Source of the DNA: Wallemia ichthyophaga EXF-994
Lineage: Eukaryota; Fungi; Basidiomycota
Reading direction: 5' to 3'
DNA: 32,000 nucleotides
Assembly (NCBI RefSeq): GCF_000400465.1
Contig: NW_008806284.1
Coordinates: 60,001 to 92,000, forward strand
Shown: in pieces, positions 1 to 9,233 of the stretch
How positions within the stretch are numbered: position 1 is the first letter of the stretch
Layout: each line of letters opens with the position of its first letter
The notes under the pieces: generated by a model
Databases searched by the model: none
What the model was told of the DNA's origin: nothing
What the model saw: only the letters and a program-made list of their open reading frames with translations
Program-made: the position numbers and the translations under genes

Positions 1-680
1 TCCCCATTTGTCTACATGGTGCATTGAGTACGCGGTGATATTGTGTTCTTTCAGCAGACGCTTTTCGCCATCATCCACATCGCGTAGACCTATATACACG
101 AGACGTGAAGGGTGCAGCTGCGACTTGATCCAGCTGAATTCGGGTATATCTCCGGCAATGCCGAGCAAGAAAGATAGCTGATAAGTAAGTGGGTTAGTTG
201 AGACGTCGCACGCATTCCGCACTTATCACTCACTGGACAACCATGCAAATTACCCGTTTCTGTTGTCTCGGGTGTATTCAAGTCGGCATGAGCATCCACC
301 CACACAACACACAGTTCTGGATGAGCGCTTAAGCTGCCCGAAATGGTCCCCATGGCTAGGCTGTGGTCCCCACCCAGTGTCACAGGAAGCTTGCCTGCTT
401 GGGCGTGTTTCTTTACCTCCTGGTACACTTTCTCAGTAGCCGCGCTGACTGTTCGTGGATACTTGAGCTTGCCGATGTCCGTATCATTCTCGAGCACGCT
501 AAATCCGCTATGATCCTCTATGGCGTCGACTGATAGTCCGAGTGTCTCCACCTGCTGCGCGAGGCCGTGCTTTATCAACTGCACAGGCCCAGTCTCCGTG
601 CCACGCTTAGGCTGTCCGTGACTAAATGGCGCATTAACGAATGCTACTTGTGGTTTTACGAATTTAAAAGGAGTGGACAT
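1..680 (-). CDS. CAR1: Arginase (3' end runs off the window); intron 178-233
   Basis: Motifs LGGDHS, WVDAHADLNTP and GNLHGCP. Removing the GTGAGT..CAG intron 233-178 restores HGCP|LSFLLG...RLVYIGLRDVD. Confidence 0.95.
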
Positions 681-4627: not shown

Positions 4628-5225
4628 TTAGTATGGCGTAATCACACCGTTAGAGCTGTTGTGGATATGTGAGTGGTTGTACACTACCAGCACTCCCACC
4701 CACCCTCTCATTGGACCTTGTTCAAATTGAATATTGATTTCTTCAACCAATGGCAATTTATTTGGTGATCTTGCGTAGAGAACGATATTCCCGTCGTTGC
4801 TATGGTATTAGTAGGTGGCTGATTGGAATAAATAGTACTCCCGCGCACCTCATCGTTGGCTGCTGCGTTGAAACTAGATTAGCTTCCTCAATCCCAGGAA
4901 GACGTGGTTTGGCGCCTGTCTGACGACGATGACGCGAGATTGTAAGTGGGTTGCTTTGGACGTATCAATTGAGTTTCATCTCTTCCAATTGCCTCCCATC
5001 TCCGCCCATCAACCCAGAAATGGCGATATCAAGAGATGGAAATGAAGCACTTACACGTCGTAGTTGAGTGAATGCGTTGAGGGCGTTGCGGGCATAGAGT
5101 TTAAACCACTCGTGGTAATATGTGCAGCTGCTGCGATTGCTGGAGGTGTGTCAAGTGGTGTGATGTGAGATGTGTGTGTGTGAGTGTTATCAGTACCCAC
5201 CGATAAAGGGGATCAAGGAGAACAT
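4628..5225 (-). CDS. Putative small secreted multi-exon protein (not in ORF track); internal splicing uncertain
   Basis: ATG at 5225 plus intron 5200-5141 gives a signal-peptide-like MFSLIPFIAIAAAAH. There is a further GTAAGT donor at 5054, and 48-49-nt introns with CTAAT/CTCAC branch sites near 4850-4800 and 4703-4656. No homolog recognised. Confidence 0.3.
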
Positions 5226-5307
5226 CGATGTAGCTGATAAAGAAGGAATTTAAATAAAGAAATCAATTTATCAACTTTACATAGACGACGGGGGTGTCTA
5301 GATTGAG

Positions 5308-6498: not shown

Positions 6499-6574
6499 TA
6501 AAGTGTATTTTAATATGACCACATGATATATCTTGATCTTCACCACCACCACACGCTGCACACAACTCAAACGC

Positions 6575-7459
6575 ATGTCGAACAACCCCGTCTACACATA
6601 TCACGAAAAACAGCACTTCAATCTCGGTGGTAACTCGCGTAAGCGTAAGATCGGGATTGAGTCGCTGCGCCGATTCGACCATTGTGCGCTATGCCTCGGC
6701 GTAGCACGCGAGGCGACGAGTACCCCGAGGGGAATTATATACTGTAAAGAGTGCATATATGCGGATCTGTTAGCGCAAAAGCAGGAGATAAAGGCTGCGA
6801 AAACCACCCTGAAGCAGCTCAAGCAGGCGCAGAAGGATGGTTCAGCAAGACGAGCAGAAATTAGCAAACAGGGAAATGTGGAGAGGTTCGATAAGGCGCA
6901 GAAGCTGGGTGGGGACAATTCACAATCTCAATCGCAATCGCAACCAAACTCAAGCTCACAATCTCACCCCACTCTACCCAGCTTTTGGCTGTCTTCTCTC
7001 CAGCCTAACATCAGCGATGAGCAGAATATTGCTGATCGGATACGCGCGTTAGAGGCCCAGAAGATGGTGACTCTCTGTCGACAGGCTACCCCTCCTCATC
7101 CACTCACACTCAAGGATCTCACGCCTGTCAAGATTAAGTACACTGACAGCGCACGCGATGTTGCTGTGTGCAGTGGATGCAATAGGACACTTAACAATTC
7201 AACTAGAATGCTTCTCACTAAATCTTGTCATAATCTTCTCTGCGGCTATTGCATAGACACTCTCTACACACCATCGCAGCAGTGCCCTGTATGCGATGAA
7301 AAGGTTGATACAAATCCAGACGATTTGATTAGGATATCCGTTGAAGGTTGGCTATTTCATTTGATTCTATTCACTCACTCACACCTTCCAGGCACCGGTT
7401 TCGCTGGTGGTGGCGGTGTTATGCTCAAGAAGAGAACAGGAACACTCGGGCTCAATTAG
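6575..7459 (+). CDS. NOSIP-like protein (N-terminal U-box/RING-like region, C-terminal RING); in-frame intron 7347-7391
   Basis: VYTYHEK, FDHCALCL...G.IYCKECIYADLL, C-terminal CSGC...CHNLLCGYC...CPVC, and EG|TGFAGGG after removing a 45-nt intron. Confidence 0.75.
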   Translation: MSNNPVYTYHEKQHFNLGGNSRKRKIGIESLRRFDHCALCLGVAREATSTPRGIIYCKECIYADLLAQKQEIKAAKTTLKQLKQAQKDGSARRAEISKQGNVERFDKAQKLGGDNSQSQSQSQPNSSSQSHPTLPSFWLSSLQPNISDEQNIADRIRALEAQKMVTLCRQATPPHPLTLKDLTPVKIKYTDSARDVAVCSGCNRTLNNSTRMLLTKSCHNLLCGYCIDTLYTPSQQCPVCDEKVDTNPDDLIRISVEGWLFHLILFTHSHLPGTGFAGGGGVMLKKRTGTLGLN

Positions 7460-7573
7460 TTTGCTAATGTGTATTATTTATATAGAGTACATTTCTCGTT
7501 GCATCGCTTTCATGTCCTGTTTTCTTGCATTAGCTAACGCGCCAACGCACCATACACACCCCAGTTACACCAG

Positions 7574-7644
7574 TGTATCAGTAAAAGCGTTTAAAGTTTG
7601 ACTTCATGTGTTTGCAGAGATTGTTCACAATACCATCATGTTGT
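7574..7644 (-). ncRNA. Box C/D snoRNA, snR52-like (25S A-loop Um2921-equivalent guide), downstream copy
   Basis: Box C ATGATGG (7639-7633), guide GTGAACAATCT followed by D' CTGC, box D CTGA (7581-7578). The guide is complementary to the conserved LSU sequence GGAUUGUUCAC, and the fifth base from D' pairs with the A-loop U. Confidence 0.8.
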
Positions 7645-7856
7645 GTGCGCTGTGGGGTGTGCTGGATGTACACAAACCCACCTCATTGTCTCATCACCAT
7701 ATTTCGTTAACGTTTACTGGAAATTCCTGTCTTGGTCGTTTGTTAGTTGGGTTCAAAACGTCCCTCAGACTCCGCGACCGCTCTTCAATGTCAGCGAATA
7801 AGCGTTATAAAGAGTTGACTTCATGTGTTTGCAGAGATTGTTCACAAAACCATCAT
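7598..7856. repeat. 42-bp direct repeat (7598-7639 and 7815-7856, one mismatch), the duplicated core of the two snR52-like snoRNAs
   Basis: TTGACTTCATGTGTTTGCAGAGATTGTTCACAA(T/A)ACCATCAT occurs twice. Confidence 0.95.
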
Positions 7857-7861
7857 TCGAG
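7786..7861 (-). ncRNA. Box C/D snoRNA, snR52-like, upstream copy
   Basis: Box C ATGATGG (7856-7850), GTGAACAATCT-CTGC, box D CTGA (7794-7791). Flanked by a 9-bp inverted repeat GACCGCTCT (7776-7784) / AGAGCGGTC (7862-7870). Confidence 0.85.
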
Positions 7862-7951
7862 AGAGCGGTCTGGATTCTGAATAAATTGTACTCACCAATT
7901 GCGTTAGTTTTGCTTCTCAGTTACACCAACTCCTTCGCTCTCCACACATGA

Positions 7952-8033
7952 TTACATTTCAGTTAGAGCTAATACATTTTATCCCTCCTCTTCTCAATGA
8001 GAATCGAGTGATAATAACTTTTCATCCTTGTAA
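7952..8033 (-). ncRNA. Box C/D snoRNA, U44/SNORD44-like (18S Am166-equivalent guide)
   Basis: Box C variant AGGATGA (8028-8022), box D CTGA (7962-7959), 5-bp terminal stem TTACA/TGTAA. The guide ATGTATTAGCTCTA is complementary to conserved 18S UAGAGCUAAUACAU. The 3' end TTAGCTCTAACTGA matches SNORD44 as recalled. Confidence 0.8.
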
Positions 8034-8154
8034 ACGAGTGTGGAGTCGTCGAAGAAAGTGATAAAGCAATGGTAAAACTAACTTACATCTTCATCCTAAA
8101 AACGATAATTAGCAAGAACACTAATAATAACACCACGCAAGACACCATCACAAA

Positions 8155-8263
8155 CACCCTCAGAGAGAAGATTTATCCCTGATAATGTCGGTCATCAATC
8201 CGCGAGTGATGAATCACACCAGAAATCCCCACAAGAATGAATAGCGATTATCATCTTGGAGTG
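8155..8263 (-). ncRNA. Box C/D snoRNA, mgU6-47/SNORD7-like (U6 snRNA Am47 guide)
   Basis: Box D CTGA (8163-8160) is preceded by AATCTTCTCT, complementary to U6 AGAGAAGAUU; the D+5 rule hits the last A of ACAGAGA. Candidate box C ATGATAA (8254-8248), C' TTGATGA (8198-8192), stem CACTC/GGGTG. Confidence 0.75.
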
Positions 8264-8314
8264 AGACTAGCGAGTGGTGTCTAGCGTGAGGTGTGAATTG
8301 CACTCACATTGCAA

Positions 8315-9233
8315 CTAGACATCTTTCACGATTGGTGAGTTGTAACGCTGTGCGTAGCCAGTCCAGCTTTCATCGTAAATGGAGCTATGACCTCCAATAA
8401 CTTCCAGGGCAAGAGCTACGATCGCGGCTGTCATCCCTGAGCCGCAACTAGTAATGACATCTTTCTTCCCTTCGAGGACCATATCCAGCTGCTGCTTTCC
8501 GAGTGTATTTTCAAACACCGCACGAAGCTCTTCAGGGCTCTTAAGCTGGCCATCCTGAAGCAATTGGGGAAAAGCGAGCGAGAGAGCACCAGGCATATGA
8601 CCCGACGACAGGCCCTGTCTGGGTTCAGGCGCCGCGCCCGCAAAGCGAGGCTGCGGACGAGCATCGAGTATGACGCTATCTTTACGCTCAATGGTGTTGA
8701 GAATATCTATGTGGTCCTTGATAAAGTTCTTCTCCAGTGTAGGTACGGGGTACTCTGAGCGTTGGGAAACATACTCTCCCGACTCTACAGGTAAACCTTC
8801 CCTCTCATAGGCTGGGAGACCACCGTCGAGGACAGCGACATTTGGATGACCCATTGCGCGAAAGGTGAAAGCAGCGCGTGGAGCGCTAAAAACACCGACT
8901 GTGTCATAGAGGAGGACTTGAGAGTTGCGCTCAATTCCCAATTGGGAACACGCTGATGCAAAAATTGCAGGTGAGGGGAGCATATGACCGACAAAGCCAT
9001 CTGGGTGGTTCGAAGCAATTTTGTCGAGATCCCAACGCCTTGCTTGAGGGAGGTGCTTGGAGAGGTACTCGTCGTTTGGGTTGCGCGCGCTGTTAGGCAT
9101 GTGCCACGAAGCATCCTGGCAGAGATGAGCGTGAGCAAGAGCAGAGACCATCTCAGCTGCTCAGCTTGCTCACCAACGCAATGAAGTGCTTGAGGTCGCG
9201 CAGCTGGCGTGCTTTGACAATTCTCGTAGTCAT
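8315..9233 (-). CDS. TUM1: Tandem-rhodanese thiosulfate/3-mercaptopyruvate sulfurtransferase; intron 9116-9173
   Basis: L|DASWHMP, HMLPS, SAPRAAFTF...LDGGLP, LDARP...GHMPGA, catalytic SCGSGMTA, IYDESW. Confidence 0.9.

What the first reader, a model, noticed from the sequence alone, without database searches (positions are those of the whole stretch)
7727..8086. Nested (stwintron-like) intron: the outer 3' splice site exists only after the inner snoRNA intron is removed
Seen in sequence: the intron opened at 8086 (U44-like RNA) has a consensus ACTAAC branch site (A at 7904) followed by CGCAATTG and then directly the next donor GTGAGT (7895), with no YAG in between. Excising 7895-7731 joins ACTAACGCAATTG to ACAG and creates a CAG acceptor (7727) exactly 12 nt after the branch A. 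The other three introns show 12-13 nt. The exon left behind is 9 nt, the same length as the upstream micro-exon. Established: spliceosomal twin introns occur in fungi. Inference: ordered inside-out splicing releases two different snoRNAs in separate lariats. Alternatives are use of the GAG inside the donor (7891, 13 nt from the branch) or one 360-nt intron.
Basis: partly seen in the sequence, partly recalled or inferred. Interest (0 to 1): 0.88.

Follow-up and report, generated by a model that had tools for sequence, protein, structure and literature searches.

The report
Nested snoRNA introns sharing one acceptor
In the 3' untranslated region of a Wallemia sulfurtransferase gene, one snoRNA-carrying intron has no splice acceptor of its own and can probably be removed only after the next snoRNA intron is spliced out; all five Wallemia genomes examined keep this layout, but no RNA data were available to confirm it.

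Summary
On the minus strand, ACTAAC (branch A at 7904) is followed by CGCAATTG and then directly by the donor GTGAGT (7895). No YAG lies between them. Removing 7895-7731 places a CAG (7727) 12 nt after the branch A.

The window is Wallemia ichthyophaga. The introns lie in the 3' UTR of a rhodanese gene, and each carries one box C/D snoRNA with its own external stem.

One such motif pair is expected about once per 32 kb by chance. However, the acceptor-less junction is kept in five Wallemia genomes whose spacers are otherwise 28-41% identical between the deep lineages. The branch site keeps the species-typical spacing from its snoRNA. The shared 3' end carries two tandem acceptors in 5 of 5 genomes, against 1 of 12 ordinary acceptors.

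This favours ordered inside-out splicing (confidence about 0.6). No transcript evidence could be reached.

It does not meet the strict stwintron definition, because no splicing motif is split. The closest precedents are the "second-order intron" of Onygenales and exon-loss snoRNA clusters of ascomycetes.

A 45-nt exon with donor GTGGGT fits the relatives better.

The parts
8315..8317 (-). TAG stop codon of the rhodanese (sulfurtransferase) gene. The snoRNA introns begin 7 nt downstream, so they lie in the 3' UTR.
8302..8307 (-). D1, donor GTGAGT of intron 1.
   Evidence: A donor follows the stop codon within 1-14 nt in all Wallemia loci.
8160..8257 (-). sno1, a 98-nt box C/D snoRNA (box C AAGATGA, C' TGATGA, box D CTGA).
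   Evidence: Conserved in four species, each with a species-specific external stem.
8096..8113 (-). BP1 GCTAAT (branch A at 8109) and acceptor TAG (8098-8096, +13) of intron 1.
8087..8095 (-). 9-nt micro-exon GATGAAGAT. The homologous exon is 10-20 nt in relatives.
8081..8086 (-). D2, donor GTAAGT of the outer (acceptor-less) intron.
   Evidence: Conserved as GTAAGT or GTGAGT in all species.
7959..8027 (-). sno2, a 69-nt box C/D snoRNA (box C GGATGA; guide plus box D GTATTAGCTCTAACTGA).
   Evidence: External stems of 8-13 bp differ in sequence between species. No Rfam hit.
7903..7908 (-). BP2 ACTAAC, branch A at 7904, 55 nt after the 3' end of sno2. CGCAATTG follows, with no acceptor before the next donor.
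7890..7895 (-). D3, donor GTGAGT of the inner intron, 8 nt after the BP2 branch A. It contains the GAG at 7893-7891, the only AG within 26 nt of BP2.
7791..7856 (-). sno3, a 66-nt box C/D snoRNA. Its 9-bp external stem is GACCGCTCT (7870-7862) paired with AGAGCGGTC (7784-7776).
   Evidence: Weak SNORD91 match only, E=2.
7742..7747 (-). BP3 ACTAAC, branch A at 7743, 48 nt after sno3.
7731..7733 (-). AG1 (AAG), +12 from BP3. Proposed acceptor of the inner intron 7895-7731.
   Evidence: A coding intron of the window uses an AAG at +10.
7727..7730 (-). ACAG. AG2 (CAG) is the proposed acceptor of the outer intron and lies +12 from BP2 only after the inner intron is removed.
   Evidence: A second YAG within 8 nt is seen in 5 of 5 genomes.
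7682..7726 (-). Next exon, most likely 45 nt.
   Evidence: The homologous exon is about 48-55 nt in relatives. This is an inference.
7676..7681 (-). D4, probable donor GTGGGT of the last intron.
   Evidence: Inferred from exon homology and from retention of G at +5 and T at +6.
7578..7639 (-). sno4, a 62-nt paralogue of sno3 with the same guide elements.
7517..7534 (-). BP4 GCTAAT (branch A at 7530) and acceptor CAG (7519-7517, +13) of the last intron. The last exon starts at 7516.

Best explanation
The 3' UTR of the Wallemia rhodanese gene hosts four introns, five in the W. sebi complex, each carrying one box C/D snoRNA. The small exon that once separated the sno2 intron from the sno3 intron has been lost, together with the acceptor of the sno2 intron. 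What remains is a nested pair.

Proposed order of events:
1. The inner intron (7895-7731; donor D3, branch A at 7743, acceptor AAG at 7731) is spliced first. Its 5' 'exon' is the still-unspliced sno2 intron.
2. That ligation puts ACAG directly behind ...ACTAACGCAATTG. This completes a 195-nt outer intron (donor 8086, branch A at 7904, acceptor CAG at 7727, +12).
3. The outer intron is then spliced. Each snoRNA therefore leaves in its own lariat.

Shown here:
- the sequence anatomy;
- the conservation of all six signals;
- the branch-site spacing;
- that the snoRNA units have conserved boxes and guide elements and species-specific external stems.

Inferred:
- that BP2 and D3 are both used catalytically;
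- that the order is inner first;
- that AG1 and AG2 are used in that order.

A likely reason the nest persists instead of merging into one intron is that each box C/D snoRNA keeps its own branch site about 50 nt downstream. That position is known to favour splicing-coupled snoRNP assembly.
For: 1. Anatomy. It is exactly as described.

2. Same layout in five Wallemia genomes. The W. mellicola and Logan SRR36086002 sequences listed here are the sno2b junction of the sebi complex.
- W. ichthyophaga: ACTAACGCAATTG|GTGAGT ... CCAAG-ACAG
- Logan SRR25399871 sp.: ACTAACGCAATTG|GTGAGT ... TGTAG-ACAG
- W. hederae: TCTAACCACATG|GTGAGT ... ATCAG-ATGCACAG
- W. mellicola: CTGACACGATTTTT|GTGAGT ... AACAG-TTCAG
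- Logan SRR36086002 sp.: GCTGACACGATTTTC|GTGAGT ... GACAG-TTTAG
. Reconstituted branch-to-acceptor distances are 12, 12, 15, 15 and 15 nt. Distances in the ordinary introns are 9-13 nt.

3. Conservation against a diverged background. The spacers are 28-41% identical between the three deep lineages. The shuffle probability of an AG-free CTRAC 6-12 nt before the donor is 0.0017-0.009 per lineage, and the product over three lineages is 8e-8.

4. The branch site is replaced, not lost. It reads CTGAC in W. mellicola, CTAAC at the same position in SRR31724827, and CTGAC in SRR36086002, while an overlapping upstream CTAAC decays.

5. Tandem acceptors. A second YAG lies within 8 nt of the first acceptor in 5 of 5 shared 3' ends. 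This is true of only 1 of 12 ordinary acceptors of the same host genes. Fisher p is 0.001, or 0.033 when only the three deep lineages are counted. AG2 changed from CAG to TAG in SRR36086002 and is still a YAG.

6. Branch spacing. The distance from sno2 to BP2 (55, 59, 61 and 33 nt) matches the spacing of the ordinary introns in each species: 48-51, 56-60, 50-54 (plus 77 for W. hederae sno3 with the CTGAC branch used here, 60 with the rival CTGAT) and 41-45 nt (35 for the extra sno2a intron of W. mellicola). This fits the known optimum of about 50 nt upstream of the branch point (PMC5519232).

7. Precedent in the window. A real coding intron uses an AAG at +10 and skips a CAG at +3.

8. Precedent in the literature. 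A branch element and acceptor separated by a nested canonical intron, spliced last, was verified by RT-PCR in Onygenales (PMC6616335).
Against: - There is no RNA evidence of any kind. The collection holds no transcript-derived contig for these genes.
- The tandem-acceptor signal is only moderately significant once shared ancestry is allowed for (p about 0.03).
- In W. hederae the inner branch site is ambiguous (CTGAT or CTGAC), so AG1 and AG2 cannot be assigned uniquely.
- The GAG inside D3 lies at +12 to +15 from BP2 in every species. Distance alone therefore does not exclude it as an acceptor.
- BP2 is transcribed before BP3, so co-transcriptional pairing of D2 with BP2 could occur before the inner intron is removed.
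- In ascomycete snoRNA clusters with lost exons, only 5'-to-3' stepwise products were detected (PMC3596301). That is the opposite order.
Confidence: 0.6

Rival explanations
1. There is one long intron. The donor at 8086 pairs directly with the downstream branch site at 7743, and the whole 356-360 nt is removed in one lariat carrying both snoRNAs. These are then separated by nucleases. BP2 and D3 are not used for catalysis. They are either relics, or they bind U2 and U1 only to help snoRNP assembly.
For: - This is the simplest chemistry.
- Luo et al. raise the same alternative for juxtaposed snoRNA introns: one functional donor choosing among several acceptors.
- Long external stems around each snoRNA can make box C/D assembly independent of splicing (PMC5519232).
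- Distal branch use and large introns occur in basidiomycete yeast.
Against: - Relics should have decayed, because the spacers are near random identity. Yet CTRAC plus a perfect GTGAGT persist in every genome.
- The branch motif was replaced in situ rather than lost.
- A single intron does not predict the second YAG.
Confidence: 0.15
2. There are competing, mutually exclusive splices. On some transcripts the 8086 donor and BP2 splice to the GAG inside the next donor (7891, +13), which releases sno2 but traps sno3 in an exon. On other transcripts only the inner intron is spliced.
For: - The GAG (or the AG of any GTRAG donor) lies +12 to +15 from BP2 in every species.
- It is the first AG downstream of the branch.
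Against: - From general knowledge of 3' splice-site preference, GAG is the least used acceptor.
- This route destroys D3, strands sno3 and would leave a 200-nt snoRNA-containing 3' UTR exon.
- It does not explain the conserved second YAG.
- U1 bound at D3 would cover the GAG.
Confidence: 0.1
3. Splicing is interrupted after the first step. The 8086 donor and BP2 form a lariat intermediate that never ligates exons. The intermediate is discarded and debranched, and sno2 is trimmed out of it at the cost of the rhodanese mRNA.
For: - A conserved donor and branch site without an acceptor is the signature of interrupted splicing, as described for S. pombe TER1, S. cerevisiae BDF2 and SPBC530.07c.
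- Some S. pombe snoRNA host introns show high levels of splicing intermediate.
Against: - Every rhodanese transcript carries these introns only 7 nt after the stop codon, so the enzyme's mRNA could then never be completed.
- The conserved D3 and tandem acceptors are unnecessary under this model.
Confidence: 0.07
4. A tiny conventional exon survives. An acceptor lies upstream of ACTAAC (AAG, ending near 7913-7912), served by a branch site GTAAC at 7924-7920. That leaves a 17-nt exon, CAAAACTAACGCAATTG, ending at 7896.
For: W. ichthyophaga and the SRR25399871 species both have TAACTGA(G/A)AAG upstream of ACTAAC.
Against: - W. ichthyophaga strain GCA_004918235 has C to A at 7920, which destroys that branch motif.
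- W. mellicola has no AG at all between the box D of its sno2b copy and the donor.
- The conserved CTRAC would then be a coincidence.
Confidence: 0.03

Closest known systems
'Second-order intron' in the rtnA gene of Onygenales (Kavalecz et al. 2019, PMC6616335)
   Same: - The outer U2 intron has its branch element and its acceptor separated by a complete canonical intron.
- The outer intron therefore becomes functional only after the nested intron is removed and must be spliced last.
- Both arose through evolutionary loss of a small exon.
   Different: - That case is in Ascomycota, inside a coding region, and carries no snoRNAs.
- Its outer donor is also separated by a [D5,6] stwintron.
- Its intermediates were shown by RT-PCR.
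- Here the organism is a basidiomycete, the site is a 3' UTR, both members carry a snoRNA, and nothing has been shown at RNA level.
Stwintrons, classes [D], [A] and [L] (Flipphi, Fekete and co-workers)
   Same: Nested U2 introns, obligatory inside-out excision, and intron-definition splicing in fungi.
   Different: By definition the internal intron splits the donor, the branch element or the acceptor. Here it lies between an intact branch element and an intact CAG, so no motif is interrupted.
Juxtaposed snoRNA introns after exon loss in ascomycete snoRNA clusters (Mitrovich et al. 2010, as cited in Luo et al. 2013, PMC3596301), and the zero-length exon in the S. pombe snoRNA61 host (Chen et al., bioRxiv 10.1101/226894)
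   Same: - There is one snoRNA per intron.
- Internal exons shrink to nothing, so introns abut.
- The arrangement is conserved among related species.
- The W. sebi complex has such a junction with a 1-nt exon.
   Different: In those cases each intron keeps its own acceptor abutting the next donor, and the products indicate 5'-to-3' stepwise (recursive) removal. Here the upstream intron has no acceptor, so that order is impossible.
Nested splicing in Cryptococcus neoformans (Burke et al., bioRxiv 10.1101/224170)
   Same: A basidiomycete with 'intron within an intron' events detected on spliceosomes; 13 cases are reported.
   Different: Those nested introns shorten a larger intron that is complete in itself. 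No dependence of the outer acceptor on inner removal is reported, and no snoRNA cargo.

Membership tests
Stwintron (spliceosomal twin intron) | A canonical U2 intron nested inside another U2 intron. | tested here: met
   The inner unit (GTGAGT 7895 ... ACTAAC 7747-7742 ... AAG 7731) lies inside the outer unit (GTAAGT 8086 ... ACTAAC 7908-7903 ... CAG 7727). This is at sequence level only.
Stwintron (spliceosomal twin intron) | [quoted passage not shown] | tested here: not met
   The inner intron starts 7 nt after the last base of ACTAAC and ends 1 nt before the CAG (the A of ACAG, 7730, lies between). All three outer motifs are intact.
Stwintron (spliceosomal twin intron) | The external intron can be excised only after the internal one, shown by a splicing intermediate. 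| not testable with these tools
   No transcript-derived contigs were found. The sequence shows no YAG between BP2 and D3.
Second-order / BP-acceptor-split nested intron (Kavalecz 2019) | The branch element lies upstream, and the acceptor downstream, of a complete nested canonical intron. | tested here: met
   The same geometry is seen in five genomes.
Second-order / BP-acceptor-split nested intron (Kavalecz 2019) | The reconstituted intron has a normal branch-to-acceptor distance. | tested here: met
   The distances are 12, 12, 15, 15 and 15 nt, against 9-13 nt in the ordinary introns of the same host genes.
Second-order / BP-acceptor-split nested intron (Kavalecz 2019) | The intermediate carrying the continuous second-order intron is detected. 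| not testable with these tools
   This needs RT-PCR or RNA-seq for junction 7896|7730.
Recursive (zero-length-exon) snoRNA host introns | The acceptor of the upstream intron directly abuts the donor of the next intron. | tested here: not met
   TTG|GTGAGT in the window; ATG|, TTT| or TTC| in the relatives. The feature is met only at the separate sno2a junction of the W. sebi complex (TAG-T-GTGAGT).
Box C/D snoRNA (the cargo) | Box C and box D with C'/D', a size of 60-100 nt, and a terminal or external stem. | tested here: met
   There are four units in the window. Boxes and guide segments are conserved across species, and the external stems of 8-15 bp differ in sequence between species.
Box C/D snoRNA (the cargo) | At least 10 nt of guide complementarity to rRNA ending at box D or D'. 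| not tested
   No Wallemia rRNA was in hand. The match of GTATTAGCTCTAA to the 18S segment UUAGAGCUAAUAC is from memory only.
   There was no hit at the gathering threshold or at E<=10. Other loci with the same guide also gave no hit.

The most novel reading that the evidence does not exclude
The acceptor-less intron is not merely waiting for the inner intron. It acts as a branch point in RNA fate. If the 8086 donor and BP2 react before the inner intron is removed, the spliceosome stalls after step 1. The lariat intermediate is discarded, so the transcript yields snoRNA but no rhodanese mRNA. If the inner intron goes first, the transcript yields both snoRNAs and the mRNA. Splicing order would then set the ratio of enzyme mRNA to snoRNA from a single gene.
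Probability: 0.08. Interest if true: 0.75.

Novelty: new variant of a known kind. Interest (0 to 1): 0.5.

Why it matters
- If confirmed, this would be, as far as the literature searched here shows, the first nested intron pair in which both members deliver a snoRNA. It would also be the first branch/acceptor-split ('second-order') intron in a basidiomycete.
- The arrangement has been held stable across a whole genus, so it is not a transient stage of decay.
- It gives a natural substrate in which the order of intron removal is dictated by sequence. That is useful for testing intron definition, co-transcriptional splicing order, and the rule that each box C/D snoRNA needs its own branch site about 50 nt downstream.
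- It shows a second outcome of exon loss in snoRNA host genes, alongside the known zero-length-exon recursion. Both outcomes occur side by side in the W. sebi complex.
- It identifies a protein-coding mRNA whose 3' UTR, starting 1-14 nt after the stop codon, is a multi-snoRNA host.

Tried and rejected
- Rfam. At the gathering threshold on the whole window, and at E<=10 on 7300-8500, only a weak SNORD91 match (E=2) appeared on sno3. Six metagenome loci with the same guide also gave nothing.
- Transcript evidence. Exact-protein look-ups were run for the window ORF, four cluster representatives (W. ichthyophaga, W. mellicola, W. hederae, SRR25399871 sp.) and two Logan members of the W. mellicola cluster. 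All returned unspliced sequence, mostly long genomic contigs. Logan contig L139 (1978 nt) is also unspliced.
- Metagenome scan with the sno2 guide GTATTAGCTCTARCTGA. It gave at least 120 loci from unrelated eukaryotes and bacteria. None had the sno3 motif nearby, so it added no Wallemia relatives.
- Rhodanese loci of Phaffia rhodozyma and Coprinopsis cinerea. They have no such snoRNAs downstream, so the host relationship is not general in basidiomycetes.
- A regex survey of introns in the window, meant to give a branch-to-acceptor distance distribution. It was too sparse and noisy to use.
- A tiny 17-nt exon upstream of D3. Rejected.
- A hairpin AATTG/CAATT around D3. It is not conserved in the closest relative.
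- The ENA contigs L015 and L016 (60% rhodanese identity). They show a sno1-like intron after the stop codon but end before the junction.
- The DNA search with a variable gap.
Full report
**Observation.** The feature lies on the minus strand. Reading 8086 downwards (coordinates re-checked):
- The donor GTAAGT (8086-8081) opens an intron that contains a box C/D snoRNA.
- ACTAAC follows at 7908-7903, with the branch A at 7904.
- CGCAATTG (7903-7896) contains no AG.
- It is followed directly by a perfect donor, GTGAGT (7895-7890). The only AG within 26 nt of the branch A is the GAG inside that donor (7891, +13).
- The second unit contains another snoRNA, then ACTAAC (branch A at 7743), AAG (7731, +12) and ACAG (7727).
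- Deleting 7895-7731 (165 nt) gives ...ACTAACGCAATTG|ACAG. This is a 195-nt intron whose CAG is 12 nt from the branch A.
- The flanking introns have distances of 13 nt.

All statements of fact in the finding are therefore correct.

**Chance.** A loose version of the motif pair (CTRAY, a 3-12 nt AG-free gap, then GTRAGT) is expected 0.97 times per 32 kb. Two other such matches occur in the window; the one read in sequence is an ordinary coding intron. The single instance is not significant on its own. Its position and its conservation are what count.

**Context.**
- The ORF at 8315-9151(-) is 99% identical to the rhodanese-domain protein of Wallemia ichthyophaga.
- The first donor (8307) starts 7 nt after its TAG stop. 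In W. hederae, W. mellicola, two unnamed Wallemia from Logan assemblies and a more distant metagenome relative, a donor follows the stop within 1-14 nt. The snoRNA introns therefore sit in the 3' UTR of a protein-coding mRNA, not in a dedicated non-coding host.
- Phaffia and Coprinopsis lack them at this locus.
- The window holds four box C/D units: sno1 8257-8160, sno2 8027-7959, sno3 7856-7791, and sno4 7639-7578, which is a paralogue of sno3.
- Boxes and guide segments are conserved across species. Each unit is flanked by an 8-15 bp external stem whose sequence differs from species to species.
- Rfam recognises none of them.
- sno2 ends at the first CTGA (7962-7959). The first base of the CTGA at 7920-7917 is polymorphic among W. 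ichthyophaga strains.

**Comparative test: the junction.** The junction between the sno2 intron and the sno3 intron lacks an acceptor in every genome (for the two sebi-complex genomes the junction shown is that of the sno2b copy):
- W. ichthyophaga: ACTAACGCAATTG|GTGAGT
- SRR25399871 sp.: ACTAACGCAATTG|GTGAGT
- W. hederae: TCTAACCACATG|GTGAGT
- W. mellicola: CTGACACGATTTTT|GTGAGT
- SRR36086002 sp.: GCTGACACGATTTTC|GTGAGT

- Between the three deep lineages the spacers are 28-41% identical, which is essentially unalignable.
- The chance that a shuffled spacer carries an AG-free CTRAC 6-12 nt before the donor is 0.0017-0.009 per lineage. The product over three lineages is 8e-8.
- In the W. sebi complex the branch motif is exchanged in place: CTGAC, then CTAAC in SRR31724827, then CTGAC. 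An overlapping upstream CTAAC decays over the same comparison.
- The distance from the 3' end of sno2 to BP2 is 55, 59, 61 and 33 nt in the four species measured. The distances of the ordinary introns in the same species are 48-51, 56-60, 50-54 (plus 77 for W. hederae sno3 with the CTGAC branch used here, 60 with the rival CTGAT) and 41-45 nt (35 for the extra sno2a intron of W. mellicola).
- This agrees with the documented preference of intronic box C/D snoRNAs for about 50 nt upstream of the branch point (PMC5519232).

I conclude that BP2 and D3 are both under selection and are not relics.

**Comparative test: the shared 3' end.** A nested mechanism needs two successive acceptors, and all five genomes have them:
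- W. ichthyophaga: AAG-ACAG
- SRR25399871 sp.: TAG-ACAG
- W. hederae: CAG-ATGCACAG
- W. mellicola: CAG-TTCAG
- SRR36086002 sp.: CAG-TTTAG

- A second YAG within 8 nt occurs at 5 of 5 of these ends, but at only 1 of 12 ordinary acceptors in the same host genes. Fisher p is 0.001, or 0.033 when only the three deep lineages are counted. The shuffle product is 0.006.
- The reconstituted branch-to-acceptor distances are 12, 12, 15, 15 and 15 nt.
- In the W. sebi complex the ligation would create ...ACGATTTTT|TTCAG, a textbook pyrimidine tract plus acceptor.
- A coding intron in the window uses an AAG at +10 while skipping a CAG at +3. The AAG at +12 is therefore a credible inner acceptor.

**Mechanism.** The best-supported reading is ordered inside-out splicing:
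1. D3, BP3 and AG1 splice first.
2. D2, BP2 and AG2 splice second.
3. sno2 and sno3 leave in separate lariats.

The sequence anatomy and its conservation are shown. Catalytic use of the sites and the order of use are inferred.

Rival readings:
- A single 360-nt excision from D2 to BP3. It does not explain why BP2, D3 and AG2 are kept.
- Use of the GAG inside D3. The distance is acceptable, but this is the poorest acceptor, it destroys D3 and it strands sno3.
- First-step-only 'interrupted' splicing (precedents). It would prevent completion of every rhodanese mRNA.
- A residual 17-nt exon. It is contradicted by a strain polymorphism at 7920 and by the complete absence of AG in the W. mellicola spacer.

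**Comparison with known systems.**
- Stwintrons are defined by an internal intron that splits the donor, branch element or acceptor (PMC6616335). Here no motif is split, so the strict definition is not met.
- The layout is that of the 'second-order intron' of Onygenales rtnA, where the branch element and acceptor lie on either side of a nested canonical intron and intermediates were verified.
- Loss of internal exons in fungal snoRNA host clusters is also known (PMC3596301), as is a zero-length exon in the S. pombe snoRNA61 host. There each intron keeps its acceptor and removal runs 5' to 3'.
- Nested introns exist in Cryptococcus.
- No paper in the library combines stwintrons or nested introns with snoRNA cargo in this way.

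I therefore rate this as a new variant of a known kind.

**Corrections to the finding.**
- The 9-nt exon 7726-7718 with donor GTAAAC is unlikely. The homologous exon is about 48-55 nt in the relatives and ends at a GTGAGT or GTGAGA donor. In the window, GTGGGT (7681-7676) gives a 45-nt exon and keeps G at +5 and T at +6.
- The 'U44-like' label rests only on a remembered complementarity of the guide to 18S rRNA.

**Limits.**
- No RNA-level data could be reached. All look-ups returned unspliced sequence, mostly long genomic contigs.
- The metagenome scan added no relatives.
- The W. hederae inner branch site is ambiguous.
- The statistical tests treat deep lineages as independent. The near-random spacer identity supports that assumption but does not prove it.

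Noticed in passing
L008 about 5237-5246 (W. mellicola); also L139 about 1735-1752 and L140 about 2335-2352: The W. sebi complex has an extra snoRNA intron (sno2a) with the same guide as sno2. Its acceptor TAG (+12 from ACTAAC) is followed by a single T and then GTGAGT. This is a 1-nt exon, in effect a recursive junction, and it lies immediately upstream of the acceptor-less junction.
   Followed up: partly
window 8302-8317 (-) and the same position in L003-L016 and L140: A protein-coding rhodanese mRNA serves as a multi-snoRNA host. Its first 3' UTR intron starts 1-14 nt after the stop codon in every Wallemia locus. Several exon junctions downstream of a stop codon could make the mRNA a target of nonsense-mediated decay.
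   Followed up: partly
window about 8282-8326 (-); protein P0124: The reference annotation of W. ichthyophaga EXF-994 (291 aa, ending ...SPITPLASLTPR) implies a predicted 40-odd-nt intron from GTGAAA to CTAG. Its last exon reads into box C of sno1. This is probably a gene-model artefact caused by the unannotated snoRNA host structure.
   Followed up: partly
window 7920, 8049-8051, 8130 and 8143: These are the only differences among three W. ichthyophaga strains across the 890-nt host region: three SNPs and one 3-nt indel. None touches a splice signal or a snoRNA box. The SNP at 7920 removes a second CTGA that could be mistaken for box D of sno2.
   Followed up: yes
window 7578-7639 versus 7791-7856 (-): sno3 and sno4 are tandem paralogues with the same two guide segments (GTGAACAATCT and AACGCTT). 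From memory, these are complementary to adjacent stretches of 25S rRNA (AAGCGUU..GAUUGUUCAC). Both copies are kept in all species.
   Followed up: partly
L008 5286-5358 (sno2b) versus 5132-5203 (sno2a): The duplicated sno2 copy in W. mellicola keeps the 3' guide and box D. Its 5' half is completely different (GGATCCACGTTCTGTGGAACTGA), which suggests a newly acquired D' guide.
   Followed up: no
L034 7225-9273; L037; L126: Marine metagenome contigs carry tandem arrays of 3-6 box C/D-like units. Each ends in the same GTATTAGCTCTAACTGA and is flanked by terminal stems. None is recognised by Rfam at the gathering threshold.
   Followed up: partly
window 7459-7516: The last exon of the host transcript runs head-on into the 3' end of the convergent NOSIP-like gene (ORF 6533-7459, +). 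Fewer than 60 nt separate the last acceptor from that gene's stop codon, so the two 3' UTRs must overlap or share a terminator region.
   Followed up: no
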